Position numbers and translations under genes: made by a program. The notes under the pieces were generated by a model. It saw only the letters and a program-made list of their open reading frames with translations. It was not told where the DNA came from and searched no databases. Below are positions 16,029 through 62,409 of a stretch of 64,000 nt of DNA, one piece after another (position 1 is the first letter of the stretch; the number at the start of each line of letters is the position of its first letter). The stretch comes from Ascidiella aspersa. Taxonomy: Eukaryota. The stretch is taken from the NCBI GenBank assembly GCA_963924565.1, contig OZ004615.1:20522001-20586000 (forward strand). Direction: 5' to 3'.

Positions 16029-16435
16029 CAGGGCTGCGGAGTTGGACGCGGGACACGAGTAAAACTATTATGTAAAATTACCCGAGTACCGAGTCCGACG
16101 TGTGCATACGCAATACGCATTACCAAGTTTAAAACTTTTAAGCAAACCGAACTTTCGAAACTGTTAAGCAATGGAAACTGCAAATTGTAAAAGTGTAATG
16201 GCAAATGGTGCAATATTTTCCAACCATGTATTGTGGTTAGATGAATTATACAACACTCCTTTGAGCGGATTGCTGAATATCCAACTTATTTTTGTACCGT
16301 AAATGGGAATCAAAGCCGGATTAGGGAGTCGACGAAATCGCACATTTAGCCGAAGCCGGACTCGGGATTTGGAATCGGTTTAATTTTCTGGACGGAGTCG
16401 GACTCGGAATAATTTTAATCGAACCCGCAGCCCTG
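16029..16435. mobile_element. MITE, CAGGGCTG/GGAGTCGGA family
   Basis: TIRs CAGGGCTGCGG / CCGCAGCCCTG. Homologous to the element in each GPCR intron 1. Confidence 0.8.
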
Positions 16436-28100: not shown

Positions 28101-31100
28101 TTTGCAGATGAAATAATTTGCTCACTATTTATCACGTTTTTTGTTATTTGCTTGGAATCAGATGACTTTACCAATTTTAATAGTGGAAAGTTCTTTTTAC
28201 ATTAATAAATTGGCTTGGTATTAACTTGCTCCGGTAATGATTTGGACCGGGACTTGTAAAATTTTGCAAAAGTGTTGACTTTAACTCAAGCAATTTTAGA
28301 AAATGACTTGACTAGGGCTTGCGTCGTTTTAAAATGACTTGTTCACAACACTGCTTGTTTTTAAAATTACTTATATGTTGCTTAGTTAGGTTTCCAAACA
28401 CTCAGAAAACTGTTAACTAATAGCCTATACACAAAAGAAAAGTCTTAAAATGTCGCCCCAAGAAAAAAAACTAAAAGAAACTGAAACATTTTTGAATATT
28501 TTAAATATTTTGAACAGATGGAGGAATCAAAGACAGCGACACAAACTTACAACTCCTTGGACCTTTTTAAGACTCCAGGAATTCGGATGGTTAGTTTTCT
28601 GATAATGTTTACCTGGTGAGTTTTTTTCGTGAAATTAGCATTAAGGCAAACATTCCCGGAAGGTTATTTGGACAGTTTTTGGCTAAGTTGATAAAGAATC
28701 TCACCGTCAAAAAGCCGTTTCGATACGTAATTGTATAAACCGTTGGAACTTAAATTCGGAAGATTTTACAAAACTTTTAGAATATCAGTAATTAAAATTA
28801 TACCACATATATAGCAGGTTTGATTGATAAGATGTCTATGGTCGAAATATTTGAAGTCTGGAAGGCGTCATAACTTTTGGAAATGAAAGTTTTATTCTGC
28901 TATTACAATAATACGTTGGAAAAAGCAGCTTGACATTTCATATGGTTTTAAAATAAGGTTGATTTGATTTATTTGCGTGGTAGTACAGTTTCCATGAATG
29001 TGATGGATGATTGTCACAATTAACAAACTGCATAATGTTGTTATGAATATAGCTTAAACCTTAAATATGTAACACGGCTAGATGCATATTGACTAAATGA
29101 ACATCAACCCAAGGAAAACGTTACAATATATAACCGTAGGCCTACTATATCATCATCTAATAGGTTTGCAGGAAATTTGTATGTCAGCAAATCTGACTGC
29201 TGATGATAGCATTACGTATGGGGTCGTTTTGCTTAAAATGATGATTTTATCGACCGATTCGGTTTTATTATTCATATTAAAGCTATATTCCAGACCTGTA
29301 CGAGTGTACGTAGTGTACTCAAATAAATTTTTATTACAAATACATTTGTAGTTGTTTCATTTGCAATGAGTTATTTTACATTTCAGGCTCGTCAACGGTC
29401 TAGTGTATTTAGGAATATCACTCAACGTTGGATCTTTGGCTGGCGATATATTTGTCAACAACGTTCTAGGTACCCAAGGCTTTTATAACATGTTAGACTT
29501 CACTTGGTACTATTAAACCAAAGACTTTAAAAGAACGCCCTTTTGATGTTATGTCCAAACAAATGAGTTGATTGCCTGGAATATCGTTAGTTCGTGATTT
29601 GCCAATCTATAAAACTGAATAACTTTTTACTTCAACTACTGAACTAACGCCACCTTCAAGGAAGTAGGCCTATCATTATTTCTTCGGTGTGTCACATGAA
29701 AAACATTTTCGTTATTTTTGTCTGTCTTTAACTCAGGGTTTCTTAACCACCCCCAAGGTGCGCGAGAACTGTTTTAAGGGGTGTGGGGATGATGAATCAG
29801 ACACAGAAAACGTGATACTGTAATTCATCTCTTTGATCAGTTAAATGTAAAACTAACTTACATTTTGCTATTGTGTTATTTTTTTATCAGTTACTTCTTT
29901 AAGAATAAAATTACAATAGTTTTGTAATTTAAGAGTGCGAGAATGGGTTGGTGATTTGAAAGGGGTGCAGCAAGGAAAAGGGGTAAAGAACCACTGCTTT
30001 AACTTATCCGTTATCATCAATCCACAGGCGGCGTGTCGGAGATTGGCGCTTACATCTTCGTGATACTGCTCATGGACAGGATCGGCCGTCGCATGATTCT
30101 CGTGTTCATGATGGGCCTGGCCGGGGTCACGCTCATATGCACAACCATCGTTAACTTGTATTCCGATGACGATTCAGGTAAAAGATAGTTGATTGATACC
30201 AAATTATTTTTCCTGAGTGTGTGCGTGTATGGGTGTAAATACAACCAGTGTAATTTCATTGTTAGGTGCTCATGAACTTGTTTGTGTGTGCATTTTTTTG
30301 TTAGATTTAAATTTAGTCAGACCACGTTTAAAGAGCAAATGTATTTACATTTTAGTCTAAATATCCTTAAACTTAAAATACTTCACCAGTTATGGAATTC
30401 TACGAAATACTTTGTTGTATATTTGAAACCATTTAACCCATTGAAATAATACTTTGACTAGCAATAATCCTCCATCATTATAGGTTAAATATCCCACGAA
30501 AAAAGTCTAAAAAAGCCCTGCGATAACTACGTTGATTTCACAGGCCTCATGACCCTCGGAACAGTGTTTTCCTTGGCGGCCAAAGTCGGCATTTCTGGCT
30601 CCTACGCCGTCATTTACAACTTTACATCCGAACTGTTTCCAACTGTGATTAGGTAAATATGGATTGTCAACGTTTTGCGGCCCAAATTCAAAATGCTAAC
30701 GATTTACTTATTTAAAGAAAAATCAAAAGGTAGACCAATCACTGCACACAATGTGCTATAATATGCATGTTAGGTCTACATGAGGGCTAAGTAGATTAAA
30801 GATTTCCCTAAATGGGAAAAAAACACTATAAATAGAAAGCGCTACATAATTTTATACATAATCAAAGTTTGCGAAAGCATAGTTTCATAGCCTGGTGCTA
30901 AAACAGCTTCAACTGGATAGGGTTGCGGTTGTTGTATATTTTTCTAGGGGGATCCTTGTTATCATGGGTGGTTCAATATTTGGCTCATTTTATATAGGGT
31001 TGTTTACCAGGTTAAGTTTGTAATATTATACATCATACTAGGGATTATTGGTTTTACAGTATATATTAAGTTTTGTTTCCCTTGACTGTTTTCTGTAAGC

Positions 31101-34100
31101 AAAAACAGATGTGGACCGAAAAATGTGTGGCCTTCACCTATGTCGTTACAGAGGCAAAATCCAATTTGATAGACAAATGCACACCCCAAAACTTTTCCTT
31201 GATTTGTTTCTGCAAGCAAAAACATTGACCGAAAATTTCTCGCATTAACTTTTTTTTTCACTCTTTTCGCTTAGATGCAAAAGAGATAGTTTGCCAAGGG
31301 ATGTGTCGATCTTATCGTTAAGAAAAAGCATTTTTTGTAATTTGTTCGTAATTTTTACAAAAAACAACATATATTTAATTAATTTTTTTATTATATCCTA
31401 CATTAAAAAGTAAGCCTACTAACTTATTGGTAACTTTGCTTGGATTTCTACAAAAAATAGTTAGTGTTGTAATGCCCCCCACCCCCTCAAACCCCCCAAA
31501 AAAATCATAACAATTTATTTTATTTTCCTTAAATTCAAGCTTAATTTAACCTATACATTCAAAAGGATGATAACATTTATTGGTTTTTGTTTACATCAAC
31601 CAAATATTTCATATTTACAAACATAATATCCTCAAAATAGATTTGAAGCAAAACCACAAAAAATGAATAGTTAAACGATAAACAAAAATAAACATTCTCC
31701 ATCGGGAGTAAATATTGTTTTGTTAATGAAATTTTTTTCAATACCCCTCCAAAGAAATGCATACTCCCAACCTTTTGTCCCAAACGAAAAAAATAAATGT
31801 ACAATGTACTTTAACAATGCTTTTTTTGTCTAAATTCAAAATAAATACAACCAACAGTTTTTCTCCTAAATAAACTTTTTGCATTAGTTTGCCTCAAAAC
31901 CACCAGATTGTTCGATTTTAGTTATTATTTACTCCAAAAAACAAACAAGATATTCGTAGTATCATTTTGATGGTTTACTAGCGATTTGTTTTACATTGAA
32001 GCAAGTTGGTTAATTATGAGTTCTCATTAATGTCTTTACCTCGACCAATCACCTAACTTCTTCATAGGGCAGATTGTAGAAAATTGTTCTTTCAGCTAAT
32101 GTCTTATTCTGATATAAATTCACTCGGTTTTCGTTGGCTTAAAGCCAGCAAGCAAAGCAGCCAGCAACAACCGTTCTGTTTATTGACTAGACATGACTGG
32201 TGTATATTCATATAACGCTCTCGCATATACAAGTTGAGAATTTGCATGAAAAAGAAAGGCGATACGGAAAAGCGGAAATGTTTTATAACCCGAAGCCTTT
32301 TTGGCAGCCGGGAACTGTGACAGCAACGTGTTCACACAGGTGAAATACTTTTATCTGTAACGGAAATATGTGTCACACAAAAACATTTGTCATGTGTGAA
32401 AACAGCCGAAGCTTTGTTCTCAGAGTGACAGCGAAAGTTTTCAATAAAAGCGTGAAAAAGTATCAACATAATGCACACTCAATAAACATTTGAAATACTC
32501 AATTAAACAACTGAAATACCCAATTAAACATCTGAAATGACCCCAGATGCTACAACATAAATAGCATATTGGCGAACACTGCAAAAGAAGGATATATTGA
32601 ATTCTGTAGTTACTATTAACTAGACAAATGAAAATATTTTTCGTGAAATATTTTTTAGGTGCAATTTACCAAATTCGTCTTTTAAATACGACAATAAACA
32701 GGTATAAACATTAAAAATACATTTTCGCGCTTTGCGCAAAATCACTTAACTTAAGATGCTTGTTAGCGCACCGCTTCGCGTGGAAACAGCAAGTTTTTTA
32801 CAATTTAGAAACGTTGCGAGTCACAATGCTTTCCTGCGTTGTACGGTGGGTGAAACTTTATTACATGGCCTTGCCTCTATATTTATTACCGCGACAATAA
32901 ATTCAAATACGACGGTACGACGTATTTGGGGAACAAATACATTTGATAAATAGATTTTATGCAGATGATGCGTACGGCGATATTGTTAAATTTTGGCCAG
33001 CTAACATGTTTAAAAAGCAAATATAATTATTCTCTTTAAATGGTTTAACGCCTGTGGTACACTATACTTTTACCAATGTATTGCTAAGACGGGCCACTTC
33101 GCATAATAAACGTAGCGCGCGCGGGACAATAAAGCGCAGCACGATGCTAGCCGCTTTTTCGCTTGGCGAGCTAAACAAAGCAAGCGATAAGAACGATTTC
33201 TGTATGAAGTTTTTCTGCCGCTAGATAGGATTCGATTGCTACAAACAGCTAAAACGATGACGTCACAACATATTATGTTTTTTGCCCTCAATCAAAGGCC
33301 CCTAGGGGTGCAGCCTCATAAACCTCTAAATGCGCACTTACATACCACTCTACGTCATGTCTAAAAATTTAGAAGTACTGCAATGTACAGTTGTACACTT
33401 TTACTATAAAGCTTCGGACCAATAACATACCTAACACCAAAAAAAAATAACGGCAGTAACAAGAAAAAACACGAAAATAAATTTTCGGCACATATGACTA
33501 GAATTATCTAGTAGCCCAAGTCTTGATTAGGACACTATAGATTTTACAGCGAGAAATGTGATTTAATTTCTATGTTGATGACGTAACAATGCCACTGTTT
33601 TTCTTCCAATTACGCAAAATGTTGCTTACAAAAAGCACATGGCGCAAACTCGAATCTTAAGGTTTTTAACTGTAAATGGGTTCTTTCTGTGCTAAATATC
33701 TGTTGATTAGTCGGATTAGGAATTTGGGAGCTTATTAATACTACGGTTGTTTGTTTAGTCATTTATTGATAAACTTTAAACTGAAACTGAAATTTAGCCG
33801 TGCATGTTTATATCCAAGTTAATCCTGGATCCCTAACAAGTTTCTAAGTACAGTACATTAGTTTTGCGGTGGCCTAGACTTGGAAAACGACCGTGTTACG
33901 AACCGGCTTCCTGGATAAACACTGCGGCAAGCTTAAAAAAGTAAAATATTTTTTCAATTAGCAATTTTATTTATTTAACAGGGAAATTAGTGTAACCATT
34001 GTTTCTTCTATGTTAGAATTGCTTTACATAGCTTATTGTTAAAATTAAAAAAATAAATTTCTTTTTTTTTTTCTTAACATAAAACGACAAAGCTTCAACG

Positions 34101-37100
34101 TAAAAAATACATAAATCGTTAAGAAACCGGGGTTCAGTGGCCCCTAGCGATTTAGAATGGCCTAATTTTGCAACACAAATAGACCGACATAATTGTACAA
34201 CACTTACAATCGGGTCGTACGCGGAGCCGATTGGTTATTGACCGTCGGTGCCGTTGGCGCGTTCGAACTGCGCTTGCAGCAAGAACCGAGCTTACACAGA
34301 GCGCCGCTGATGGTGTCGGAATAAATCAAAGGGTTCAGGGCGCTGTTGGTCGGCAGTAGGATCCCGGCGCTTATAGCGTACACGACCGGGGGCAAATGCA
34401 CCCCCGACAGCTGCACAAAGGCCAGGGTGCAGAGCGGAACCCAGCAAGCAAAGTCGGTGAGAATAAGACGCGAAATGCGCGCCTGCATTTTCCTGGCCCG
34501 CTTGCTAACGGTGCCAGCCATTCGCACGCTGACGCGGTAGATGGCAAAGTAGCAGACGACCATGTAGAGGAAAAGCACAAAGTTGAGACTGATTAGGAAG
34601 CAGGAGAAAACCCAACCCGCCTCTCCGACGTTGACGAAAATTCGCGGCATGCAAACGCTCGTTTCGCCGTAGTAACCGATGTCGCCCTTGATGGGCAAGT
34701 AAGGGATCTTGCTTTCGATAAACTGCTTGGTCGCCATCCACGACGAAGCGTTGATTTGCCCCATTCTAAACGCGAGCGCGTTTAAGTCGGATTTTTTCAC
34801 TTGGTCCGATTTGTAAAAGTAATTGGGGAACCAGACCCCTGAAACAAAGTAGCCGGAAGTGGGGAACATTAGCGGAAAAGTGGCAATCAGGGCGGCCAAA
34901 ATCCAGGACGCAACAACCGCCATTCGTCCCCAAACAATTGTAAGAGTGGAAGTGACGAAAGGTCGTAGAATGGTGACGAGGCGAAACGTGGTCATGGACG
35001 TCATCACGAACACCGAGTTTTCTGTGGAAAGCACGACTAGGACTCCCAGAAGGGAGCAAAGCCGGCTCGTGCGCCAAGACTTATCGTGAAAGCAGTAAGA
35101 GCCCGAATACTGGTCGGCCTTGACGCAAACGGTGAGAAGGTAAATGCCCATGAGGAAATCCGAAATGGAGAGGTTGAGAACAAACAGCGAGTTGTACTGC
35201 ATCGGGATTGACATCGGCTCGGCTGCCAGGAAGCTCCTCGCCGTGGTGACGGACACCACAATGTTTCCGGCGATTGAAAGCAGCGCCATCATCCAGAAAA
35301 TGGCCAGGATTAATTTGTTGCCGATCAGTTCGTACTGGGACGAAAATACGTTGACTTTTTGGCTTTTGGGAGGACACTCGTCGCTGCCGTCAGAACAGTC
35401 CCACTTGCCATCCTCGACGTCGCTTATCGGCACCGAAAGCGGCTTTTTATCCAAACAGTAAAAGCGTTTGTCGGCGCAGCGGGCCTTGGACTCGTCGGCG
35501 CCGTTTTCGCAGTCGACTCTACCGTTGCACAACTCGTCCACGTCGATGCTCACCGACACGCCGTTGACGCAGTAAAAGCGCTCGGAGCAGTTCTTCTCCT
35601 CGAAGCCGAAGGGACAAGAAGCGTTTTTGATGACATAAGCGGCCGAGTCGTTCTGCCCGTTGCAGTAGCGATCCCCCATCGGGTAATACCAGCGACAGGG
35701 ATCGTCGCAGAACCACGGCCTGGTCGAGCAGTTCACACATTCGTCGGACATGTCGGCGCACTGAGGCCGCCCGTCGCACATCACGGCTTCGATCCAACCA
35801 GGCGCCGCCACGCAACGGATCGTAGCCCTGCCTTTGGTATCGACGCAGCCGACCGTGTTGGTCTTGTCGACGCACTGGTAGCTCCTGTTGCACAGCAGCT
35901 CTTCGCTTGGGAGGCAGCCAACAGTTTCGTCGCAGTAGAGTTGGTCTGGATGCTGACAGCGCGTCTTGGACACCCCCAGCACCTTGTCGCAGACTGTTTG
36001 ATCGGCGCAGAAACACTCGTCGGAAAGGTCGTAGCAGTCCACCACCCCGTCGCACACCTGCCTGGGCGCTATGATCAGCTTCTTGTCGAAGCATTGAAAG
36101 CAGCGCATCGCGCCGTCGACGAAGCACAAGTCCGAGCCGTCTGAGCACTGCGGCAAGTCGTCGTAGAGGTTGAGCTGCGGCAGACTGCAGGTGAAAGTCG
36201 AGTACTTGGTGGCGCATTTGAAACCTGGCCCGTAGTGCGTCTCATCGCTAAAGTCGCTGCACTGGCTGTTGCCGTCGCAGAACTGACGAATAATGAGCAC
36301 CTCCTTGTTTTTGCACAACACTGGCTTGATGCAGCCGGGCTGGCTGGCGGCGGGCGGCGAAGAAATACAGGCCCATTCCGGCGTCTGCTTCCCGATCGTG
36401 TTGTTTACGTAGGTCACGGTGAGCACCGGATGGCAGTGGGTCAGCGAGGCGTTCTCAAAATGCAGCATTGCGTTTTTTGCGTGCAAATCCGGACAGCTCA
36501 TGGCCTTGGTGCTCCAATTGTCGGCGCAGTCGTTCATTCCGACCACACAGGGCTCGTCATCGCCGCTGTAGCAGTCTATCATTCCGTTGTTGACGTCGGA
36601 AGTGGAAATACACCCCTTGTCCGAAGTGCAGTTCGAGCTTGCGTTAAATATGCAGCCGCACTTGACCTGGCCGATCAAACACGCACAGCCCTTCTCGTCG
36701 CTCCAGTCGCCGCACTCGTTCACGTCGTTACAGAGCTGCCAGGGAAGCACGCATCCGTTGCTGGTGTTGCACGTCTTTTCGACAGCCTCGTAACACGCGC
36801 AAGGCGTTTCGATGGGCAGGCAGGTGCAGCCGTATTCGTCGCTCCAGTCGCCGCAGTCGTTGTAGCCGTCGCATTGTTTACTTGCGCTTACGCAGCCGGG
36901 CGATCGGCCACAACCCGGGCGACTGCACCGGCACTGGAAGCTGTACTCCGGGCAGGTGCAGTTATTTTCGTCGCTCCAGTCGCCACAGTCGTTTACCAGG
37001 TTACAGCGCCTGACGCCGGCCACGCTTTCGGCTTTACAGGAAGACAGCACCGTCGGTCGAACGCTGCAAGCGCAGCGGAAAAAGGCGCAGTCGGTTTCGT

Positions 37101-52100: not shown

Positions 52101-55100
52101 GACAGGTTGAGAACAAACAGCGAGTTGTACTGCATCGGGATTGACATCGGCTCCGCTGCCAGGAAGCTCCTCGCCGTGGTGACGAACACCACAATGTTTC
52201 CGGCGATCGAAAGCAGCGCCATCAGCCAGAAAATGGCCAGGATTAATTTGTTGCCGATCAGTTCGTACTGGGACGAAAATACGGTGACTTTTTGGCTTTT
52301 GGGAGGACACTCGTCGCTGCCGTCAGAACAGTCCCACTTGCCATCCTCGACGTCGCTTATCGGCACCGAAAGCGGCTTTTTATCCAAGCAGTAAAAGCGT
52401 TTGTCGGCGCAGCGGGCCTTGGACTCGTCGGCGCCGTTTTCGCAGTCGACTCTACCGTTGCACAACTCGTCCACGTCGATGCTCACCGACACGCCGTTGA
52501 CGCAGTAAAAGCGCTCGGAGCAGTTCTTCTCCTCGAAGCCGAAGGGACAAGAGGCGTTTTTGATGACATAAGCGACCGAGTCGTTCTGTCCGTCGCAGTA
52601 GCGATCCCCCATCGGGTAATACAAGCGACAGGGATCGTCGCAGAACCACGGCCTGGTCGAGCAGTTCACACATTCGTCGGACATGTCGGCGCACTGAGGC
52701 CGTCCGTCGCACATCACGGCTTCGATCCAACCAGGCGCCGCCACGCAACGGATCGTAGCCCTGCCTTTGGTATCGACGCAGCCGACCGTGTTGGTTTTGT
52801 CGACGCACTGGTAGCTCCTGTTGCACAGCAGCTCTTCGCTTGGGAGGCAGCCAACAGTTTCGTTGCAGTAGAGTTGGTCAGGATGCTGACAGCGTGTCTT
52901 GGACGTCCCCAGCACCTTGTCACAGATTGTTTGATCGGCACAAAAGCACTCGTCGGAAAGGTCGTAGCAATCCACCACCCCGTCGCACACCTGTCTGGGC
53001 GCTATTATCAGCTTCTTGTCGAAGCATTGGAAGCAGCGCATCGCGCCGTCGACGAAGCACAAGTCCGAGCCGTCCGAGCACTGCGGCAAGTCGTCGTAGA
53101 GGTTGAGCTGCGGCAGGCTGCAGGTAAAAGTCGAGTACTTGGTGGCGCATTTGAAACCCGGCCCGTAGTGCGTCTCATCGCTAAAGTCGCTGCACTGGCT
53201 GTTGCCGTCGCAGAACTGACGAATAATGAGCACCTCCTTGTTTTTGCACAACACTGGCTTGATGCAGCCGGGCTGGCTGGCGGCGGGCGGCGAAGAAATA
53301 CAGGCCCATTCCGGCGTCTGCTTCCCGATCGTGTTGTTTACGTAGGTCACGGTGAGCACTCGATAGCAGTGGGTCAGGGAGGCGTTCTCAAAATGCAGCA
53401 TTGCGTTTTTTGCGTGCAAATCCGGACAGCTCATGGCCTTGGTGCTCCAATTGTCGGCGCAGTTGTTCATTCCGACCACACAGGGCTCGTCATCGCCGCT
53501 GTAGCAGTCTATCATTCCGTTGTTGACGTCGGAAGTGGAAATACACCCCTTGTCCGAAGTGCAGTTCGAGCTTGCGTCAAATATGCAGCCGCACTTGACC
53601 TGGCCGATCAAGCACGCACAGCCCTTTTCGTCGCTCCAGTCGCCGCACTCGTTCACGTCGTTACAGAGCTGCCAGGGAAGCATGCATCCGTTGCTGGTGT
53701 TGCACGTCTTTTCGACAGCCTCGTAACACGCGCAAGGCGTTTCGATGGGCAGGCAGGTGCAGCCGTATTCGTCGCTCCAGTCGCCGCAGTCATTGTAGCC
53801 GTCGCATTGTTTACTTGCGCTTACACAGCCGGGCGATTGACCGCAACCCGGGCGACTGCACCGGCACTGGAAGCTGTACGCCGGGCAGGTGCAGTTGTTT
53901 TCGTCGCTCCAGTCGCCACAGTCGTTTACCAGGTCACAGCGCCTGACGCCGGCCACGCTTTCGGCTTTACAGGAAGACAGCACCGCCGGTCGAACGCTGC
54001 AAGCGCAGCGGAAAAAGTCGCAGTCGGTTTCGTCGCTGCCGTCGCCGCAGCCGTCTACGTGATTGCAAACGTAGCCTTCATTCACGGCCAGCGTCCGTCC
54101 CGGGCAGGATTCCCCGCATGCGCACACGAAAAGGCTTGCACCATATGTACAGTTGCGCTCGTCGCTACCATCTACACAGTCCTTGTATCCGTCGCACACC
54201 CAAGACGACCTAATGCACCAGGTATCCCCAGCGCAAAAGGTCGAATTCGGTTTGGCGCATTTGCAGCCAAAGTTGGGCGCCAGGCACTGACAGGAACGCT
54301 CGTCCGAGTGATCCGAGCACTGGTAGACGCCGTCACAAACCTCGTACGCTGGCAACTTGATGATGTTATTCGTGCAGCTTCGGTTTCGAGAGCAAGTGCA
54401 CGTGAACAAACTTGGTCGATCATCGCAGCCCGCTTCGTCGCTCCAATCCCCGCAGTCATTGAGCCCGTTGCATTGAGCTCTTTTGTCAACGCATCCCGCC
54501 GAAGTCTTGCAGCCCGACCAGTTACAATCGCACGTAAACTGGCTCAAACCGCAAGGACATGCCACCTCGTCGCTCCAGTCGCCGCAGTCGTTTCTTTGGT
54601 TGCAAACCTCGACCCAAGCAACGCGTCGAGTACTGGGCGTGACGCATGTGCCGTTCCGCGCGCATGCGCAGTAGAACTGGACCGCAACAAAGTCGCAGTA
54701 AAGCTCGTCGCTTCCGTCGGCGCAGTCGTCCCGGCCGTCGCACTTGTTGATCAGCGGAACGCAGCTGATCGGATCCGTGCACTTTCCGTTTGCGTAGCGG
54801 CAACCGCACGAAAACTGACCGGCGCATTGGCAGTCGGCCTCATCGCTTCCGTCGGAACAATCGCTTTTGCCGTCGCAGGTCTGCCGCTGCAGAACGCACA
54901 CCTCAGGGTAGACGCACGTGTTGTTGTCCTGACACGCGCAGCTAAAATACCCAGTATCACAAGTACATCCACGCTCGTCTGTCCCGTCCAAGCAATCCAG
55001 CACACCATCACAAATCTCTTTATCGCTGTAGCATCCTCTACCGTAGTAGCAGTGCTGTGTTCTCAGCGGGCAGCCGCACTGGTAAAGGCCAGGCGCGCAG

Positions 55101-58100
55101 AAGCAGTTCAGCTCGTCGAAACCCTTGAGACAGTCGCCCCCGCCGTCGCAAACCCAGTTCTTAGGGATGTTTTCCGCTTTGTAGTTGCCCCTGACGCTGA
55201 AGTAGTAGCCGCTGAGGTATTTGGTCCGGGCCGGGCACATGCAGTTCACCATGCTGCTAGCTGGATCCAACCGCACGGCGTTGCACCATTCTGCAAACAA
55301 AGTGGTAACCCATTTGTGGAGTTGATTTTTTGTAATACTGCAGTTTATAGGATTGTTATGTGCGACCATTACGACGTATTCTCGTGGGTCGGAATCTGAA
55401 CTCGGGACTCGAGTAAGACCACGTAAAACTACCCGAGTCCCGAGTCCGACGTGCGTATGCGCAGTATCAATTTTTATAACTGTTAAGGCGGCAAAATGTA
55501 AGTTGTAAAAGTGTAATAGCATATGAGAAATATTTTCAATAATGACACCAATATGAGTGGATTGCAAAAAATCCACCTTAATTTAGTTGCGTAAATGGGT
55601 AAAATACAGGCTGTAGAGTCGGAACTGGACTCGGGACTCGACAAAATCTTACATTTGACCGGAGTCGGACTTGGGTGTATTTTTTTTGCCGGAGTCGGAC
55701 TAGGGAGTCGGACTCGGGTTGTTTTTAAGCGACTCCACCGCCCTGGTGTATATAAACGTGACTCTTACAGGGGTGCTGCATTCATTACTTGTGTTCTAAT
55801 ACGCCGTGGTGTTTAGCGTGCGATGCTGCCCCACCAGTAGATATTACACCTTTTACACGCAAAGCTACGGAACAGGAATTCGTTAAAGTGAAATTTTGCA
55901 ATTAGGGACTTGCGATAAAGTTTTTTGTTATGCACGTACTCGAACTTTTGGTTTAAAGGTATACGACTCTCCAAACTGAAACCAGTTGTCATCATTACTT
56001 TGGTCAAGTAAATCAAATTTTTTTAGGAAAGTCCAATGGCAATATTTTCTAAGGTTTACGGTTTGTTAGGAGGCTTATTGATCTTCGATTTATCTGTTAA
56101 ATTTTCCCCCAAAATTGCTTTTTATACTCAAACTAAAAAACGTTGCTTCAAAACCATATCTCAAAATGTACCAATTAGTTTAGTATGGGATCGGCACCGA
56201 TACTATAGTCTAATATCGAACGAGTAGCGATACTACCACTTGGTATCGGGTTTTGGAAAATTTGTAATAAGGAGTGTCTGATTTTATCGGAGCTAAATCG
56301 ATATTCAATACCAAATGGAAAATATCGACAAATGGGTGGAATAACGTTGATTCGATACGACATTGGCAAAGGTATTTCAGCAATGATTTTTTTTTTTTTT
56401 ACAAAGAAACATTTTGTACTTTGGAGATACAATTCTCTAAAAATTGATGGGAGATTAGGATTAACGTGTTTTTTTTTTGTTTTTTTTTCACTTTAATATT
56501 GGTCTTACTGGTTACATAGAATGATATTTTGTTAGTCAGCAAACTTTTAATAAGCAGATAAAACGAATATATATGATATAATTACGGTTCCTATATTAAT
56601 ATTACGTTCTGTTAGCATCTAGGTTGGAAAACGCCTTGTCAGGTGTGTGGGTTTTAAGCACAATGAAAGAATATTTATTGCAAATATAGAAACGACAATC
56701 AGTACTTACAGGTACAGTACTTACGATATACGTATAATAATTACCTCCGTAACGTACGCGATCTGGACTCCACAATGAACAGTAAGCACCGCTCAACTAA
56801 CGATTTACAACATTTCTTATATAGCCTACATCGGACAGATGTGAGTAATTACTAATTCGTTAGAAAACGCGACACACAACACCTTAGGAAGTCGGCCATA
56901 CGACCAACGAAATTACAATACGCGACGGGAAATTAGAGTGACAGCATGAGCGATTCCGCCGACAGGCTGTTTACAGGCGGCCAGAGTTGATGGGGTCACA
57001 GAGTTCCAAACAATCCGCTACAATTCACTCTCCCTGCCTTTAAGTCAAAAGGTCCGAACAAACTTCATCTTCGTGGTGTTCCTCCTGCATGTCATTGTTC
57101 ATTGGATAATAGTGTCCTCCTTGTCGGCCGGCTTCTTGTAGCACAAGTCAGGAGCGGTGGCGACCTCCGAAACATAGATGACTGTTGTCCAACGATGAAA
57201 AAGCTCGCTTCGTACAAAGAATACCTCCGTAATCGAGCTGGTACTTTGTTGCTAAACGATCTGTGTAAAAATACTTACACCGGCGTTTAACAAACATGCG
57301 AATACAAGAAATGTACAGCCTACAATGCAGAAATAGAGCCGTAAAAATTGTAATTTACTGTTCAAAGGAAAAACCGTCAGTCAAATGCCTATAGAACCTA
57401 TCGTTCTAGAATACCGAAATCAAGGAAGTTAAAGGTGCTAATCTTTGAAACTCGAAAACAAAATTAACGCCATGCCCATTTTAAAAGTAATCCCTAAATG
57501 ACAGACACTTTAACCTTGGCGTAAAGGTTAAACTAAAAAGTTACACTATTGCAAGCTTGTAACTATTGCAAGCTTGTAACCCAAATGGACATGCGACGGT
57601 ACCTCAGCCGTCAGTAAGGTAAAAAGGCATCACGTGGCCTTGAAAACATCGGGAACTATGCCCGGAATACAAACAAAACGGTCAGGTATTTTAGGTGTGA
57701 TATCTCTGATCAAACACCGTAAACCATATAGGACCAGACTGCAGGTTAGCTGCAAACGGAAATGGCACTTTAGAAGGCACAACTTCTGGAAGTGTAAGAG
57801 ATAAATTTATCTGTTCATAGGCTTAGAGAATAGTTTACGAGAGAAGAATATTCTCTTGCGTAAAGTTTCACCTTTAACTTAACAAAAAGAAACGTAATTT
57901 TGCAAATGACTGAACAACTATGCCGTAAATTTAGTTTAGCTCAAACTTGGTTTTAAATCTGCATTGATCGACCGATATGACAACATTAAAACGTGCTCAT
58001 AATTTAGCAACAACATACTTACAATGGCGGCGGCTTAGAGAGAAAAACAGGCGTGTTGCGTAAAAAATTAAACAAAGCATGTATCAATATCTGGCAATTC

Positions 58101-61100
58101 ATAGCGCGCACAAAAATTACGAATAAACTATAGCTGCCATCCTACGTAATGAACCTATTGGTATAAAACAATTTGATTGGTGTAAGGCCCATCCCTGCGT
58201 TAGCGATGACCTTAAGCAATATGCGCCAAAAATTACCCAAAAACGCTCACAAAACGTCTATCATAAAAACTAGCAAGAGGCTGAGAATAAGGGGAAACAA
58301 AGTTTAGGAAAGTCGAAGGTTAGAATAGTAATAGGCCGAATATAGATAAGGTAAAGTGAAGTTATGAAAGCTTACTAGATTATCATCAGGTGTAAACGTC
58401 GTAGGAAAGTGCTGCTTCCTTCGCAACAAATACGAACGGTTTTCTTGCAAGCAGTTAAGTCGGGCGGACGTTTCCAAGCACCGTAAAACTCAGCAACATC
58501 ATATGGTCGGCAAGAAATCCTGTCTGATAAGATTATAGATAAGCATAGGTGTAAAAGATAGGTTTCGAGTACCTTTAGAATAGAAATTGACGTAGAATTG
58601 CATGACGTCATAGATGTGTCGAATGTAGCAGATCGAATAAACTCGCGTTGTTGACGAGGCGTCGCATCTACAGTTGAAAGTTTGCTGCTGGGCGTTGCTG
58701 CAACAGACTGCAAAGATTTAAACGGAACAATAATAGGTTTTGCCGTGCTGCAAAACGACGAAGAAGCGGCTTCGAAAGTTGAATTTGGTTGGTCGTTGTC
58801 AAACTGCAGGTCAGCTGAAAGAGAAGCTGCAGGTTGAGAAACAGAATCGTTAGACGAGATTGGCACTGCAATCGGTGGAACAACTTGAACCGATGGCATT
58901 AGAATATCATTTTCTCTAGATTTCTTACGAAAAAACAAGTTTACGAAAAAGAAACGAAAAAACAAGTTTAGGAAGAGAGCTAATACCTATAGTTGCGGTC
59001 GACGAAGCTTGATAGAAACGTTCGAATTCATGCCCCTATCACCCGGAAAACTTTTACCTTTCTTAATATTACCTAGCATGGCAGCTAGACGCGTTGACGT
59101 TTTGTTGTTGCAAGCTTTAAGTTTGCTTGAAACCTTTGAAAAGAATGCAGAAAAATTATTCTTCGACATAACGATTTAAAAAAGAATAACACACGGAAAA
59201 TAAGACTAAAAAAGGGTGCAAAAGCGTAGGTTACAAATAGATTTAAATCAACACAATTGGTTAATATTAATTATTTTAGAATATTAGTTAGTCAGAAGGT
59301 ATATGCGTGTTCAGTACCACTAGGGCGTCTCCAATTTGTGGGGCGCAGCCACAATGGAATAATGTTTATTGCAAATATACAAACGACAATCAGTACTTAC
59401 AGGTACTTACGATATACGTACAATAATTACCTCCGTAACGTACGCGATCTGGACTCCACAATGAACAGTAAGCACCGCTCAACTAACGATTTACAACATT
59501 TCTTATATAGCCTACATCGGACAGATGTGAGTAATTACTAATTCGTTAGAAAACGCGACACACAACACCTTAGGAAGTGACAGCATGAGCGCTTCAGCCG
59601 ACAGGCTGTTTACAAGCGGCCAGAGTTGATGGGGTCACAGAGTTCCAAAGAATCCGCTACAGGTGTAACTGACTGATGCCTAATCCAACCTAAAATGCTA
59701 ATGATTATCACTTTTTTTTGGTTCAATGTATAATGCGCTCTATTTTTCTGTTTACGATACATGGCTTAAAGTCAAACCCCTTAGGGCATAACTGCGAGTT
59801 AATATTTCATCCATCGAACTATTTATGTGCTTTGTTGGCAACGACTAATACAGAAAGTCGACACAAAGGGCAAAACTATATTTCAAGGGGGTGTTGTAAC
59901 AACGGAAAACCGATTAAAATGACAACAAAACCATGTAAAAAGCCAAGTAAACGACTAAAGACAAATCCAACCTACTGTAATATTCAATCCATCCAATTGG
60001 CTCACTTCCATCCACGGTAATTCTACTTTCCAACAATATTCCAAGAAGTAAAGCACGGCAAAACGATGGTAGATATTGCCTGAACGAACTAAACGCCGCC
60101 TTTTGCATTCCTTTGGTTCAGTCTATTCAGTTTGCTGCATCACAGTTTTCCAAACCTGAAACTACAATTGAAAAGCTTAGGCGCACAGGGAATTGGATAT
60201 TAAAGGCTTTATCCTGTTCAAATAAATGTTATGACATATTTATGCCAACGGCACTACAACGATTCCACTTAGGCGAAAAAATAAGCCATTGTATATAGTC
60301 GAATAAAACTCAAACTTTTATTCCTCATTACTTTGCCTACAAACCTATGACATTTAGTTCTAACATTTGTTGAACATGAAGCATGCGGGTTTAATTACAA
60401 GTCTCATTAAACTAATTTGCCTCAATCAATCAACCTCGCTATTTCTTCAATAAGCATTGCTGTAGTCTGATTACAAATCCACACAGTTTGTGTTGGCTAT
60501 TATGGGCAAACCGGCAAATGCCGGCAAGCACAACCACTCACTGTATTGTCTAGACAAGACTGGATATATATTGATATAACGCGCTGCTTATAACAAGGTG
60601 AAAATTTGCATGACAAATTGCGACATTTTACAGCAGCTTACTTCTCAAAAAGGAGCGGAAGTTTTTACCTGGCGATTACTCACTGTGAAACGTGCCGAGA
60701 GACATTTCACAGGCGGCGAAAAGCGGAAATAATAAGTCATAATATACATTAGTCATATGTGAAAGAACCTGGACTCCCGGGTCTCAAGCGGCAGCAGATA
60801 CAGAGAATGCTTTTAGTAAAAGGCGAGCAAGAATGACAAAATCATAATCATAACATATTTGATAAATGCACAGATTCTATAAACGTTTAAAATATTCAAT
60901 TAACCTCTAAATTGACCCCTGTCGCTACAAACAATCCACTTGCTTGCTGCCAGTGCCTGTAGCTACTATACTTCCACCAATGTGGTTCGTTTGGCCAACA
61001 CAGTGAATTTCAACCTTTTGAGGTTTACGATACTCTTTATAAAACACAAACAGTTTGAGATATAACCTTACTGGCAATGTCGCTAAGTGGTTAACTGTAA

Positions 61101-62409
61101 TGTCACGATATAGGCTAATAACTTAATCGCATCAACTGTACACAAGATAAAAAAAACATTCTGGATTTGTTGCACTACAATTGTACATAAAACGATTGAA
61201 CCAAAAACCTCACTAGTAGAGAAAAATTGCAACCAAAATATTTCTCGGCACTCTTACGCGTTAGAAACACCACACTGATTTAAAAACATTGAGACAATTC
61301 ATTTAAAACAGCGTGAGGCGAAGTCTCATACAAAACCGCTTCACCGAAAAACTTCTTCACAACTACAAGGGAACAAAGTTCTACACTTTATCCCATCTGA
61401 TAAAGTTTCGGAATAGAGTATGCTAAACTCCCATATTAACCGCCTTTTCTCTACTATTGTTTTAAAATCAGGATACGGCCTAAAACGTGCTTTAAAGTTC
61501 TAAAACGCTGGTAGAGTGTTGGTTTAACGATGATTTGCTAAACGTCATAAGCGAAATTAAAAAGCCCGTCACACAATGCCATTTCGGCCCAATTCATTTA
61601 AGTCTGAAAAATGTACAGATGTACCCAGCGTAGCGGGCAAAAACTTTCAAATAATTTGCTAGGATTTTGCTAATTGGTTTTCTCTAATGTCTTGATAAAC
61701 TAACTTAAAACCATACACTTTAACTGTACACAAGGTAGAAAAAACATTCTGCTTTTTTGCACCACAATTGTACATAAAACTAATTGTATTAAAAACCTCA
61801 CCAATGTGCGATATAAAGAGCGCGATAACGTTAAAATTTTACTAGACGTGTGTGCGAAACAAACCACCCTGAAATGTAGGTAAAAACAACCCTTAAAGTC
61901 TGTAAAAAAACAATGCTGAAATGTCGGTAAAAAATGCTCTAAAATGTCGGTAAAAACAACCCTGAAATGTAGGTGAAAAACAATCCTGAAATGTAGGTAA
62001 CAAACAACCCTGAAATGTAGGTAAAACAACCCTGAAATGTAGGTAAAACTACCTTGAAATGTAGTCAAAACACCCCTAAAATGTCGGTAAACAACCCCGA
62101 AGTGTTTCGGAAAACCAACCTTGAAATGTCGGTGAAAAAACTACACTGAAGGCTTGAATCGTGCTCAGGATGAACGGCGTCGCATTTGCGTCGCTCGGAG
62201 CTCAGATCGGAAGCGTCTTGTCGCCATTGCTGATCGCTCTTGAAGACTACATCTCGTGGCTCCCGAACGTGATCTTCGGAGTGGCATCCTTGCTGGCCGG
62301 AGGACTCTCCCTCTGTCTTCCGGAAACCAACGGGATCGACATGCTTGAAAGCATTGAGGACGCTGAGCTCTTCTACAAGAACAGAAAGACACTTCCCAGT
62401 AAAACGTGA
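19110..62409 (+). CDS. SLC22 family organic cation/anion transporter, paralogue B, 13 exons, 546 aa
   Basis: Exons 19110-19255 (MIDFDLILTKIGGLGRFQ), 20376-20477, 21643-21775, 22269-22372 (FDLVCD), 24576-24730, 25535-25659, 26364-26468, 27647-27736, 28518-28615, 29387-29469, 30028-30177, 30544-30652 (ELFPT), 62169-62409. They total 1641 nt in one open frame, including the Cys-rich first extracellular loop typical of SLC22. Confidence 0.88.
22380..22730. mobile_element. hAT-type MITE inserted at the exon-4 splice donor of SLC22-B
   Basis: TIRs CAAGGGTCGGGAAC / GTTCCCGACCCCTG and a perfect TSD GGTCAGAA. Confidence 0.88.
24736..24862. repeat. 11-bp CTGCTGTACAC-like tandem repeat at the start of intron 5 (paralogous tract at 7187-7266)
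   Basis: The same degenerate repeat follows the exon-5 donor in both SLC22 genes. Confidence 0.7.
29734..29996. mobile_element. hAT-type MITE
   Basis: TSD CTTTAACT; TIRs CAGGGTTTCTTAACC / TAAAGAACCACTG. Confidence 0.8.
31997..32554. mobile_element. Solo LTR (unit 1)
   Basis: TGAAGC...GCTACA termini, 4-bp TSD ACAT on both sides, 558 bp. Confidence 0.75.
34204..38357 (-). CDS. LDLa-repeat GPCR copy 1 (RXFP/GRL101-like 7TM, no LRRs), main 4154-nt exon
   Basis: About 20 CDGxxDCxDxSDE-type modules, then a 7TM domain with LGR/RXFP motifs: NLSISDFLMGIYL, WRTSRLC, YYGETSVCMP, LTDFACWVP, LPTNSALNPLIY. Acceptor ccactttgtttgcAG at 38358-59. The ORF track extends the frame to 38589. Confidence 0.92.
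38452..38860. mobile_element. CAGGGCTG/GGAGTCGGA-family MITE in GPCR intron 1 (also about 47036-47444 and 55386-55746)
   Basis: Aligns with 16029-16435. The right TIR CAGCCCTG is present and the left one is eroded; GGAGTCGGACTC repeats. Confidence 0.75.
40046..40178 (-). CDS. Predicted signal-peptide exon 1 of LDLa-GPCR copy 1
   Basis: MQKAAFSSFMQYLPSFCRALLLGILLESKITVDGSEPIGWIEYY, then a|GTAGGT phase-1 donor matching the phase-1 acceptor at 38357. Conserved in all three units. Confidence 0.65.
40575..41127. mobile_element. Solo LTR (unit 2 copy)
   Basis: Duplicated with the unit; TSD ACAT. Confidence 0.75.
42788..46941 (-). CDS. LDLa-repeat GPCR copy 2, main exon
   Basis: Near-identical to copy 1 at an offset of 8584 bp, with an intact frame and the same acceptor at 46942-43. 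Confidence 0.92.
48637..48769 (-). CDS. Predicted signal-peptide exon 1 of LDLa-GPCR copy 2
   Basis: 133 nt, same sequence and GTAGGT donor as 40046-40178. Confidence 0.65.
49166..49718. mobile_element. Solo LTR (unit 3 copy)
   Basis: Duplicated with the unit; TSD ACAT. Confidence 0.75.
51194..55290 (-). CDS. LDLa-repeat GPCR copy 3, main exon, with an in-frame 57-nt deletion removing most of TM3 (possibly non-functional)
   Basis: Reads SRLCS|MTTFRL versus SRLCSLLGVLVVLSTENSVFVMTSMTTFRL in copies 1 and 2. Exon length is 4097 nt = 4154-57. Confidence 0.88.
56646..59661 (-). mobile_element. Non-autonomous LTR retroelement (LTRs 56646-57022 and 59337-59661; no gag/pol)
   Basis: TG...CA termini and a 4-bp TSD GGTG (56642-45, 59662-65). 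The empty site ttgtcgGGTGtaact is present in units 1 and 2. On the minus strand, a PBS-like TGGAGACGCCC follows the 5' LTR and a purine tract AAAGGCAGGGAGAGTGAA precedes the 3' LTR. Each LTR contains TATATAAG and AATAAA. Confidence 0.9.
59976..60108 (-). CDS. Predicted signal-peptide exon 1 of LDLa-GPCR copy 3
   Basis: 133 nt, conserved up to the GTAGGT donor; the sequence picks up indels immediately past the donor. Confidence 0.62.
60377..60929. mobile_element. Independent solo LTR, a diverged relative of 31997-32554
   Basis: TGAAGC...GCTACA termini and TSD AACA. The empty site gttgAACAatccac is seen in units 1 and 2. Colinear similarity to the unit-start LTR. Confidence 0.8.
61858..62150. 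repeat. About 21-bp minisatellite (AAACAACCCTGAAATGTAGGTA) immediately upstream of SLC22-B exon 13
   Basis: More than a dozen degenerate tandem units are visible. Confidence 0.9.
62169..62409 (+). CDS. Terminal coding exon (13) of SLC22 paralogue B
   Basis: Near-identical to 15375-15615. The phase-2 acceptor matches the exon-12 donor at 30652, and no other copy of this exon occurs between 30653 and 62168. Confidence 0.88.

What the first reader, a model, noticed from the sequence alone, without database searches (positions are those of the whole stretch)
30653..62168. The whole GPCR array is nested antisense in the last intron of an intact SLC22 transporter
Exon 12 of SLC22-B ends at 30652 in phase 2, and the only matching exon 13 is at 62169, giving a 31.5-kb intron. 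The equivalent intron in paralogue A is 13804-15374 (1.57 kb) and holds no such gene. The receptor therefore probably entered this intron after the SLC22 duplication (or was lost from A) and then amplified in place. Three antisense transcription units inside one host intron could couple or interfere with host expression.
Basis: seen in the sequence. Interest (0 to 1): 0.75.

Follow-up and report, generated by a model that had tools for sequence, protein, structure and literature searches.

The report
Receptor gene array inside transporter intron
Three recently duplicated receptor genes sit backwards inside the 31.5-kb last intron of an apparently intact sea-squirt transporter gene, a clear example of the already well-known "nested gene" arrangement.

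Summary
SLC22-B is a clean 13-exon, 546-codon gene. All its introns are GT-AG and no exon has a stop. Exon 12 ends at 30652 with two bases of a codon. The only fitting exon 13 in the genome, apart from paralogue A's own, starts at 62169, which gives a 31,516-base intron.

About 90% of that intron is a head-to-tail array of three units (31984-60376). Each unit carries one LDL-A-repeat/7TM receptor gene on the minus strand. These genes have two exons, not one: a signal-peptide exon and a 4.1-kb body. Copy 3 lacks 19 residues in the membrane part.

The copies differ by dS 0.04-0.06, so they amplified in place recently. An outgroup paralogue has a 634-base intron 12, which favours gain in B.

Paralogue A also has a giant intron: intron 4, about 69.9 kb, filled with an antisense cytochrome P450 array. 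No RNA run exists for this species, so splicing across the array is inferred from intact frames, dN/dS of about 0.26 and equal A/B rates.

Gene clusters nested in host introns are well known, so this is a new member of a known kind. Other windows of this scan had already noted the P450 array.

The parts
19110..19255 (+). SLC22-B exon 1 (ATG at 19110)
   Evidence: tblastn of Ciona OCT-like P0121, residues 1-49. Frame and donor GT checked.
20376..30177 (+). SLC22-B exons 2-11: 20376-20477, 21643-21775, 22269-22372, 24576-24730, 25535-25659, 26364-26468, 27647-27736, 28518-28615, 29387-29469, 30028-30177
   Evidence: Collinear with P0121 and with paralogue A. All are AG...GT, phases match and there are no stops.
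30544..30652 (+). SLC22-B exon 12, ending with 2 bases of a codon. Reading through the donor gives AGG TAA, an immediate stop.
30653..62168 (+). SLC22-B intron 12 (31,516 bases, GT...AG)
   Evidence: The other 11 introns of B are 366-2203 bases.
62169..62409 (+). SLC22-B exon 13 (79 codons plus TGA): the last membrane helix and the C-terminus
   Evidence: It is 91% identical in DNA to A's exon 13. dN/dS is 0.26.
31984..40561 (-). Array unit 1 (8578 bases)
   Evidence: Self-blastn: 31984-41898 matches 40562-50489 at 97.3%. Junction alignment.
40562..49152 (-). Array unit 2 (8591 bases)
49153..60376 (-). Array unit 3 (11,224 bases, including a 3.0-kb insertion)
34204..38357 (-). Receptor G1 exon 2 (LDL-A repeats plus 7TM, through the stop)
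   Evidence: ORF. Pfam Ldl_recept_a 9e-62 and 7tm_1 3.9e-12. Acceptor ...tttgtttgcag, and homology to the C7 paralogue begins there. 37% identical to Clavelina P0002 over 1304 residues.
40097..40178 (-). Receptor G1 exon 1 (ATG, 27-codon signal-peptide-like start, donor GTAAAA). Inferred, no RNA evidence.
   Evidence: The ATG, the length and the donor position are conserved in the C7 paralogue.
42788..46941 (-). Receptor G2 exon 2
48688..48769 (-). Receptor G2 exon 1 (inferred)
51194..55290 (-). Receptor G3 exon 2. It has an in-frame 19-codon deletion in the membrane region.
   Evidence: No 7tm_1 match at E<=0.01.
60027..60108 (-). Receptor G3 exon 1 (inferred; donor GTAGAA)
56647..59661 (.). 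3.0-kb insertion in intron 1 of G3, bounded by direct repeats 56659-57022 and 59350-59661 (83%). Probably a mobile element.
38480..38860 (.). Dispersed repeat copy inside intron 1 of G1 (the same element is present in G2). It supplies part of the false N-terminus of the long ORF.
   Evidence: 3972 first-look candidates genome-wide, of which 40 were scored; scored copies outside the array are 86-94% identical.
31984..32300 (.). Dispersed repeat R at the start of each unit
   Evidence: 378 first-look candidates genome-wide, 40 scored.
60463..60617 (.). Diverged copy (73-74%) of repeat R, just right of the array
61861..62150 (.). 24-base minisatellite (12.5 copies) ending 18 bases before exon 13
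7027..15615 (+). Paralogue SLC22-A exons 5-13: 7027-7181, 8919-9043, 10005-10109, 11150-11239, 11462-11559, 11999-12081, 12416-12565, 13695-13803, 15375-15615. Exons 1-4 lie at window coordinates -68608 to -62881.
3360..3668 (-). First exon of the last P450 gene of the array that fills SLC22-A intron 4
   Evidence: Pfam p450 1.5e-05, profile positions 1-58. Exon map.

Best explanation
This is a real nested-gene arrangement in an ascidian genome.

SLC22-B is an organic-cation-transporter-like MFS carrier with 13 coding exons. Its last intron was short in the ancestor. It took in a roughly 6.7-kb DNA segment carrying a complete two-exon LDL-A-repeat GPCR gene. That gene belongs to the tunicate 'LDLRR-GPCR' family, and its nearest paralogue is on contig C7. 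It lies on the opposite strand to the host.

The segment, together with flanking mobile-element sequence, was then duplicated head to tail into three units. This most likely happened by unequal crossing-over, and it raised the intron to 31.5 kb.

The host is inferred to be still transcribed through the array and spliced from 30652 to 62169. Each receptor unit keeps its own start exon and presumably its own promoter, so the units are probably expressed independently of the host.

Shown: the anatomy, the intact frames, purifying selection and the recent amplification.
Inferred: splicing across the array, independent expression of the receptors, and insertion as the way in.
For: Host gene:
- Model of 13 exons, 1641 bases, all GT-AG, phases consistent, no internal stop.
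- 12 of 13 exons hit Ciona 'organic cation transporter protein-like' P0121 collinearly over residues 1-542. P0121 matches Pfam Sugar_tr at 4.7e-41.
- Exon 13 has only two close copies in the 308.6-Mb assembly.
- A versus B: dN/dS is 0.27 for exons 5-12 and 0.26 for exon 13.
- With paralogue C as outgroup there are 18 B-derived and 23 A-derived residue changes (p=0.53), and 1 versus 2 in exon 13.
- Homology between A and B stops within about 7 bases of exon 13 on both sides, so the exon is conserved while its flanks are not.

Receptor array:
- Three units are 95-97% identical.
- Receptor dS is 0.042-0.064 and dN/dS is 0.16-0.22.
- Pfam gives LDL-A and 7tm_1. The best relatives are ascidian proteins at 37-40% identity.
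- The C7 paralogue shares the body, about 600 bases of 3' flank, the start exon and the intron position. The copy therefore arose from DNA, not from mRNA.

Intron length:
- Paralogue C has a 634-base intron 12, and A has 1571 bases.

Assembly:
- Logan contigs of two DNA runs run from exon 11/12 to 31194-31214, and from 31189-31195 across the array's left edge (31984) to 32016-32026.
Against: - No RNA evidence. The run search listed 2 runs, neither on record as RNA. The 30652->62169 junction, the receptor start exons and any expression are therefore unverified.
- Pairwise dN/dS averages over the whole time since the A/B split. If the array arrived recently, an orphaned exon 13 could still look intact.
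- Reading through the exon-12 donor gives a stop at once, so a truncated product of about 467 residues is possible.
- The acceptor at 62168 follows a minisatellite and has a weak pyrimidine tract.
- The right edge of the array was not tested with reads.
- The two contigs on the left side only abut (X1) or overlap by 26 bases (X2) inside a repeat. No single contig spans exon 12 to the array.
- X2 also shows one weak joint, 31226->33002, with a side of 23 letters.
- The runs may come from the individual that was assembled.
Confidence: 0.7

Rival explanations
1. The arrangement is real, but the host is no longer a working 12-helix transporter. The array has stranded exon 13. SLC22-B transcripts end in the intron (AGG TAA directly after exon 12) or are not made, and exon 13 only looks intact because the event is recent.
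For: - An immediate stop follows on read-through of the donor.
- The intron is 14 to 86 times longer than B's other 11 introns, which are 366-2203 bases.
- The array units are very young, with dS 0.04-0.06.
- The acceptor context is weak and lies next to a minisatellite.
- There is no RNA evidence either way.
Against: - B shows no rate acceleration relative to A: 18 versus 23 derived changes overall, and 1 versus 2 in exon 13.
- Exon 13 has dN/dS 0.26 and an open frame with conserved AG and stop positions.
- The receptor lineage split from its C7 paralogue at dS 0.41. If it has been in the intron since then, exon 13 has stayed intact for a long time.
- Paralogue A, with an even larger intron (69.9 kb), is equally intact.
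Confidence: 0.2
2. The nest did not arise by insertion. The receptor was once the downstream, tail-to-tail neighbour of SLC22-B. A tandem duplication copied exon 13 together with the neighbour, and the proximal exon 13 was then lost. The host now reaches over the neighbour to a distal exon 13.
For: An apparent intermediate of exactly this kind exists at paralogue C. The order there is exons 1-13, then a minus-strand P450, then a second copy of exons 12-13 located 14,234 bases further on, with the same tblastn statistics as the first copy, and then a second P450 3' part. Paralogue A's P450-filled intron 4 could have arisen the same way.
Against: - No exon-13 relic was found anywhere in B's intron 12: scores were 11-13 against a shuffled mean of 13.3, and there was no tblastn hit.
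- The 8.6-kb units contain no SLC22 sequence.
- No receptor copy lies within 11.6 kb downstream of exon 13.
- No P450 relic lies downstream of A's exon 13.
Confidence: 0.2
3. Assembly artefact: the array, or exon 13, has been misplaced, and the true intron 12 is short.
For: Tandem units that are 95-97% identical are hard to assemble. The right boundary was not tested, and no single contig bridges exon 12 to the array.
Against: - There are no N runs in the window.
- Both flanks are unique sequence.
- Contigs from two runs tile from exon 11/12 over the left array edge with 0-1 differences.
- A unit-1-specific contig (34023-34271) is present at about single-copy depth in X1.
- Exon 13 has no other place in the assembly.
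- A mis-join would have to create two clean junctions in unique sequence.
Confidence: 0.04

Closest known systems
TipE/Teh gene cluster nested in the last intron of CG18675 in insects (PMC3240667, passages read). The same paper cites the GMC oxidoreductase cluster in a large intron of flotillin-2.
   Same: Several paralogous genes of one family sit together inside a single intron of an unrelated host gene, and in the TipE case it is the last intron. The host spans tens of kb because of them. In that system the nested genes are regulated separately from the host.
   Different: The TipE nest is old and conserved across insects, and its members have mixed orientation. Here the three copies are near-identical (dS 0.04-0.06), all antisense, and found so far in one ascidian genome only. 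Expression is unknown here.
Human NF1 intron holding OMG, EVI2A and EVI2B on the opposite strand (PMC4394429, passages read)
   Same: [quoted passage not shown]
   Different: That paper presents the NF1 guests simply as three coding genes, not as copies of one another. Here the guests are tandem copies of one gene.
Ciona 'LDLRR-GPCR' family (Kamesh et al. 2008, PMC2396169, passages read)
   Same: The domain plan is the same: tandem LDL-A repeats, no leucine-rich repeats and a rhodopsin-type 7TM region. The best sequence relatives are ascidian proteins of this type.
   Different: The paper's text describes 14 such Ciona receptors with up to 10 LDL-A repeats (its table lists 15). This genome has at least 104 scored relatives of 317 first-look candidates, and the proteins are about 1400 residues long. 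The paper's additional files, which list members and domains, could not be seen.
SLC22 / organic cation transporter-like carriers (Ciona XP_009861187.2 = P0121)
   Same: Collinear over residues 1-542. P0121 carries Pfam Sugar_tr and MFS_1, and its source names it 'organic cation transporter protein-like'.
   Different: Exon 13 is only 56% identical to P0121. The substrate is unknown.

Membership tests
Nested (intron-hosted) gene | All exons of the guest lie within one intron of the host | tested here: met
   Receptor coding exons span 34204-60108, inside intron 30653-62168. UTR ends are unknown.
Nested (intron-hosted) gene | Host exons on both sides are joined in one mature transcript | not testable with these tools
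   No RNA run is served for this organism. Only indirect support exists: phase match, a unique exon 13, dN/dS of 0.26 and equal rates.
Nested (intron-hosted) gene | Guest has its own transcription unit (own start and end) | tested here: inconclusive
   A conserved ATG/signal-peptide exon with its donor is present in all 3 units and in the C7 paralogue. Poly(A)-signal hexamers lie 134-655 bases after the stops. There is no transcript evidence.
SLC22 / MFS sugar-transporter-type carrier (host) | Match to Pfam Sugar_tr (PF00083) or MFS_1 (PF07690) across the protein | tested here: inconclusive
   The search was done exon by exon only. 4 of 9 B exons tested gave hits at E 0.0012-0.032, all below the gathering score because the pieces are 35-51 residues long. 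Collinearity with P0121 (Sugar_tr 4.7e-41) covers 12 of 13 exons. The joined model was not searched.
SLC22 / MFS sugar-transporter-type carrier (host) | Complete open reading frame with canonical splice sites | tested here: met
   13 exons, 1641 bases, GT-AG throughout, no internal stop.
Tunicate LDLRR-GPCR (guest) | Tandem LDL-A repeats in the N-terminal part | tested here: met
   Pfam Ldl_recept_a at 9e-62 with 9 stretches in copy 1, and at 1.4e-58 with 8 stretches in copy 3.
Tunicate LDLRR-GPCR (guest) | Rhodopsin-family 7TM region | tested here: met
   Copy 1 matches 7tm_1 at 3.9e-12, above the cut-off. Copy 3 has no match at E<=0.01 because of a 19-codon deletion. Copy 2 was not scanned, but it is the same length as copy 1 and differs from it at dN 0.007.
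Tunicate LDLRR-GPCR (guest) | No leucine-rich repeats (unlike relaxin-type LGRs) | tested here: met
   No LRR family appears among the Pfam matches at E<=0.01 for copies 1 and 3.
Retrocopy (considered for the guest) | Homology to the parent limited to the mature mRNA, with introns lost | tested here: not met
   The C9 and C7 copies share an intron between the start exon and the body, at the same position, and share flanks.

The most novel reading that the evidence does not exclude
The two tandem SLC22 paralogues have each, independently and in different introns, become hosts of an antisense tandem array. P450 genes fill A's intron 4, and LDL-A GPCRs fill B's intron 12. A third paralogue shows the process half-way: its 3' exons have been duplicated beyond a tail-to-tail P450 neighbour. 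On this reading, nesting here arises repeatedly when host 3' exons are duplicated together with a downstream neighbour. Transporter, P450s and chemoreceptor-like GPCRs would then form one co-regulated small-molecule-handling domain, not a chance pile-up.
Probability: 0.1. Interest if true: 0.6.

Novelty: new member of a known kind. Interest (0 to 1): 0.35.

Why it matters
It gives a clean, datable example of a compact-genome intron growing about 20- to 50-fold: 31.5 kb, against 1571 bases in A and 634 bases in C. The growth came from taking in a gene and then amplifying it in place.

A sister gene next door has done the same with a different gene family in a different intron, which gives a natural pair for comparison. 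If expression data become available, the locus offers a simple test of whether antisense guest genes interfere with a host.

It is also a practical warning for annotation. An automatic gene call could end SLC22-B at exon 12 and start SLC22-A at exon 5. It could also give the receptors a false N-terminus taken from a mobile element.

Tried and rejected
1. A 'relic of the receptor next to paralogue A'. 16159-16407 matches 38545-38793 at 68%, and an ORF at 16004-16213 resembles the receptor ORF's N-terminus. I rejected this because the shared piece is a dispersed repeat with 3972 first-look candidates genome-wide, and it lies in the receptor's intron 1.

2. Horizontal transfer as the cause of the GC-rich (0.52-0.59) receptor blocks. 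Rejected: the best relatives are ascidian proteins. The C7 paralogue is equally GC-rich, and SLC22 exons reach GC 0.54.

3. A retrocopy origin. Rejected because the intron and flanks are shared with the C7 paralogue.

4. Paralogue A as a 5'-truncated copy. No exon 1-4 match was found within 27 kb upstream. I then found exons 1-4 at -68608 to -62881 with the same lengths and GT-AG sites, so A is complete with a 69.9-kb intron 4.

5. Leftover homology between A's intron 12 and the unique flanks of B's intron 12. None was found: the best match is 36 bases at E=0.001.

6. An exon-13 relic inside B's intron. None was found.

7. A host gene around the C7 paralogue. No convincing coding pieces appeared in 28 kb. 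No family scan was run on them.

8. RNA evidence. 

9. The orthologous locus in other tunicates.

10. Literature. Searches for nested genes with Ciona and for SLC22/nested/intron/tunicate listed no paper on an SLC22 host gene in tunicates. I saw only the listings, apart from the three papers cited by passage.
Full report
WHAT IS THERE

The window is G000:C9:20522001-20586000 of a 308.6-Mb assembly in 75 contigs. The best relatives of its proteins are ascidian (Phallusia, Clavelina, Ciona), so the organism is a tunicate.

On the plus strand, exon 12 of the second transporter gene (SLC22-B) is 30544-30652. It is preceded by AG and followed by GTAAAT, and it ends with two bases (AG) of a codon. 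At 62169, directly after an AG, a stretch opens whose first base completes AGG. It then reads 79 codons to a TGA at 62407-62409.

To get a guide protein I searched the exon-13 peptide alone against the representative library. That gave 739 proteins at E<=0.001. The best is P0121 (581 residues, 56% identical), and the exon aligns to its residues 471-543. P0121 is named 'organic cation transporter protein-like [Ciona intestinalis]' by its source, and it matches Pfam Sugar_tr at 4.7e-41.

A tblastn of P0121 against the window hits 12 of B's 13 exons in order, over residues 1-542. The thirteenth, exon 8, is fixed by 92% DNA identity to paralogue A.

The resulting model is:
- 19110-19255
- 20376-20477
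- 21643-21775
- 22269-22372
- 24576-24730
- 25535-25659
- 26364-26468
- 27647-27736
- 28518-28615
- 29387-29469
- 30028-30177
- 30544-30652
- 62169-62409

It has 1641 bases, GT-AG at all 12 introns, matching phases and no internal stop. Eleven introns are 366-2203 bases long and the twelfth is 31,516 bases. The spliced protein was not assembled or searched as a whole; each exon was handled apart.

IS EXON 13 THE RIGHT PARTNER?

The exon-13 peptide has 17 matches in the whole assembly. Only B's own (100%) and A's (89%) are close, and the next is 51% identical and 4 Mb away. No relic of exon 13 lies in the intron: local alignment scored 11-13, against a mean of 13.3 and a maximum of 16 for 20 shuffles.

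Paralogue A's exons 5-13 have the same lengths and splice sites. It consists largely of repeat fragments and holds no receptor.

THE GUESTS

Three GC-rich blocks (0.52-0.59, against 0.33-0.40 around them) hold minus-strand open frames of 1461, 1461 and 1460 codons. Pfam finds LDL-A repeats (9e-62, nine stretches) and a rhodopsin-type 7TM region (3.9e-12) in copy 1. In copy 3 it finds LDL-A only. Copy 3 lacks 19 codons in the membrane part.

The blocks belong to head-to-tail units: 31984-40561, 40562-49152 and 49153-60376. The units are 95-97% identical. The third carries a 3.0-kb insertion (56647-59661) bounded by direct repeats. The array is 28,393 bases, about 90% of the intron.

The long open frames overstate the genes at their 5' ends. 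38480-38860 is a dispersed repeat, with 3972 first-look candidates of which 40 were scored; the scored copies outside the array are 86-94% identical. Homology to the nearest paralogue starts at the acceptor ...tttgtttgcag. That paralogue lies on contig C7 and is 91% identical in the 7TM part.

About 1.7 kb upstream, each unit has an ATG followed by 27 codons that read like a signal peptide, and then a GT donor. The ATG, the length and the donor position are kept in the C7 copy.

With this model G1 and G2 encode 1411 residues and G3 encodes 1392, all open. This exon-1 model is an inference, since there is no transcript evidence.

The family is the tunicate 'LDLRR-GPCR' group described for Ciona, where the text describes 14 members and the table lists 15 (PMC2396169, passages). 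In this genome, 104 of 317 first-look candidates were scored, and all 104 matched at about E<=1e-97.

AGE AND ORIGIN

Receptor copies differ by dS 0.042 (1 vs 2), 0.045 (2 vs 3) and 0.064 (1 vs 3), with dN/dS 0.16-0.22. Against the C7 copy, dS is 0.40-0.41. A versus B gives dS 0.39 for exons 5-12 and 0.21 for exon 13.

So amplification in place is recent. The arrival of the receptor and the A/B duplication cannot be ordered by clock.

An outgroup paralogue C (C9:16482890-16492379) has all 13 exons within 9.5 kb. Its intron 12 is 634 bases and its intron 4 is about 0.9 kb. Because both A and C have a short, empty intron 12, one gain in B is simpler than two losses.

The C7 and C9 copies share the start exon, the intron between the start exon and the body, and about 600 bases of 3' flank. 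The copy was therefore made from DNA, not from mRNA.

Each unit begins in a dispersed repeat (378 candidates). A 73-74% diverged copy of that repeat lies just right of the array. This fits unequal crossing-over between repeat copies but does not prove it.

IS THE HOST STILL A GENE?

There is no RNA run for this organism: the search listed 2 runs, neither on record as RNA. The evidence is therefore indirect:
- Frames and splice sites are intact.
- dN/dS is 0.27 for exons 5-12 and 0.26 for exon 13.
- Exon 13 is conserved at 91% while its flanks cannot be aligned.
- With C as outgroup there are 18 B-derived and 23 A-derived residue changes (p=0.53), and 1 versus 2 in exon 13.

Several points count against this reading:
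- These measures average over the whole time since the split.
- Read-through of the donor stops at once (AGG TAA).
- The acceptor follows a 290-base minisatellite.
- The intron is far longer than any other in the gene.

ASSEMBLY CHECK

Logan contigs of two DNA runs (two samples, one study, possibly the assembled individual) lie at 30110-31194 and 31195-32026 for X1, and at 30110-31214 and 31189-32016 for X2, with 0-1 differences. The second contig of each run crosses the array's left edge (31984) by 42 and 32 bases respectively.

The two contigs of a run only abut (X1) or overlap by 26 bases (X2) inside a repeat, so no single contig bridges exon 12 to the array.

X2 also has one weak joint, 31226->33002, with a side of 23 letters. 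The tool warns that such joints often come from repeats.

The right edge was not tested. The window has no N.

Paralogue A is not a simple control. No exon 1-4 match lies within 27 kb upstream of its exon 5. Exon 1 has a 92% identical copy at C9:20453392. Exons 1-4 lie at window coordinates -68608 to -62881, with B's exact lengths and GT-AG sites, and all of A's exons are open.

A's intron 4 is therefore 69,907 bases, against 2203 in B. It is filled with minus-strand cytochrome P450 genes. Six of six ORF pieces tested match Pfam p450. A tblastn map shows 8 haem-binding exons and 7 N-terminal exons plus one partial. The last P450's first exon is at 3360-3668 of this window.

Earlier notes of this scan on the preceding window describe the same P450 array.

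At paralogue C, a minus-strand P450 lies tail to tail just downstream. A second copy of exons 12-13 lies 14,234 bases further on. This looks like a possible half-way stage towards nesting.

COMPARISON WITH WHAT IS KNOWN

Gene clusters inside one host intron are established:
- The TipE/Teh cluster lies in the last intron of CG18675, and the GMC oxidoreductase cluster lies in a flotillin-2 intron (PMC3240667, passages).
- NF1 holds OMG, EVI2A and EVI2B on the opposite strand. About two thirds of human nested genes are antisense to their host (PMC4394429, passages).

The present case is a young, clean member of that kind. The unusual points are that it occurs in a compact tunicate genome and that the neighbouring paralogue shows a second, independent case.

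My searches listed no paper on an SLC22 host gene in tunicates (listings only).

VERDICT

- It is a new member of a known kind, of moderate-to-low interest.

Noticed in passing
window coordinates -62880 to 7026 (C9:20459121-20529026); last P450 first exon at window 3360-3668 (-): SLC22-A's intron 4 is about 69.9 kb and is filled with a minus-strand cytochrome P450 array: 8 haem-binding exons and 7 N-terminal exons plus one partial. Both tandem SLC22 paralogues therefore host an antisense array, in different introns.
   Followed up: partly
L015-L017 (C9:16482890-16509811): Outgroup paralogue SLC22-C is compact (13 exons in 9.5 kb) and has a minus-strand P450 tail to tail downstream. Exons 12-13 and the P450 3' part recur 14,234 bases further on. 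This could be an intermediate on the way to a nested arrangement.
   Followed up: partly
whole genome: The LDL-A/7TM receptor family is very large in this genome. 104 of 317 first-look candidates were scored, and all 104 matched at about E<=1e-97, mostly with open frames of 730-1470 codons (range 444-1907) and often in tandem clusters (C2:35.3-36.7 Mb, C6:0.1-2.4 Mb, C8:5.27-5.34 Mb). Ciona is reported to have 14-15.
   Followed up: no
window 51194-55290 (-): Receptor copy 3 has an in-frame 19-codon deletion in the membrane region and loses the Pfam 7tm_1 match. Its dN/dS against the other copies is still about 0.2, so it may be a very young pseudogene.
   Followed up: partly
window 56647-59661: A 3.0-kb insertion specific to unit 3 is bounded by 310-360-base direct repeats (83% identical) and holds a 196-codon minus-strand ORF at 58375-58965. 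It is probably a terminal-repeat mobile element.
   Followed up: no
window 24576-30652 and 62169-62409 versus 7027-15615: dS between A and B is uneven along the gene: 0.58-0.65 in exons 5, 6 and 12, but 0.16-0.22 in exons 8, 10, 11 and 13. This suggests patches of gene conversion between the paralogues, including exon 13, whose two copies lie 47 kb apart.
   Followed up: no
window 62202-62204 (exon 13, codon 12): B has Gln where A and the Ciona relative have Arg, in the stretch ...GA(R/Q)(V/I)GS... Paralogue C has Ala there. From memory only, this may be the helix-11 position that carries the charge-selectivity residue in mammalian OAT/OCT carriers. No call checked this.
   Followed up: no
window 30941-31204: Contigs of both DNA runs also support a form that skips about 242-262 bases here, within a high-depth repeat. 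This may be a present/absent mobile-element allele in the left flank of the intron.
   Followed up: no
window 61861-62150: A 24-base minisatellite (12.5 copies, 74% matches) ends 18 bases upstream of the exon-13 acceptor.
   Followed up: no
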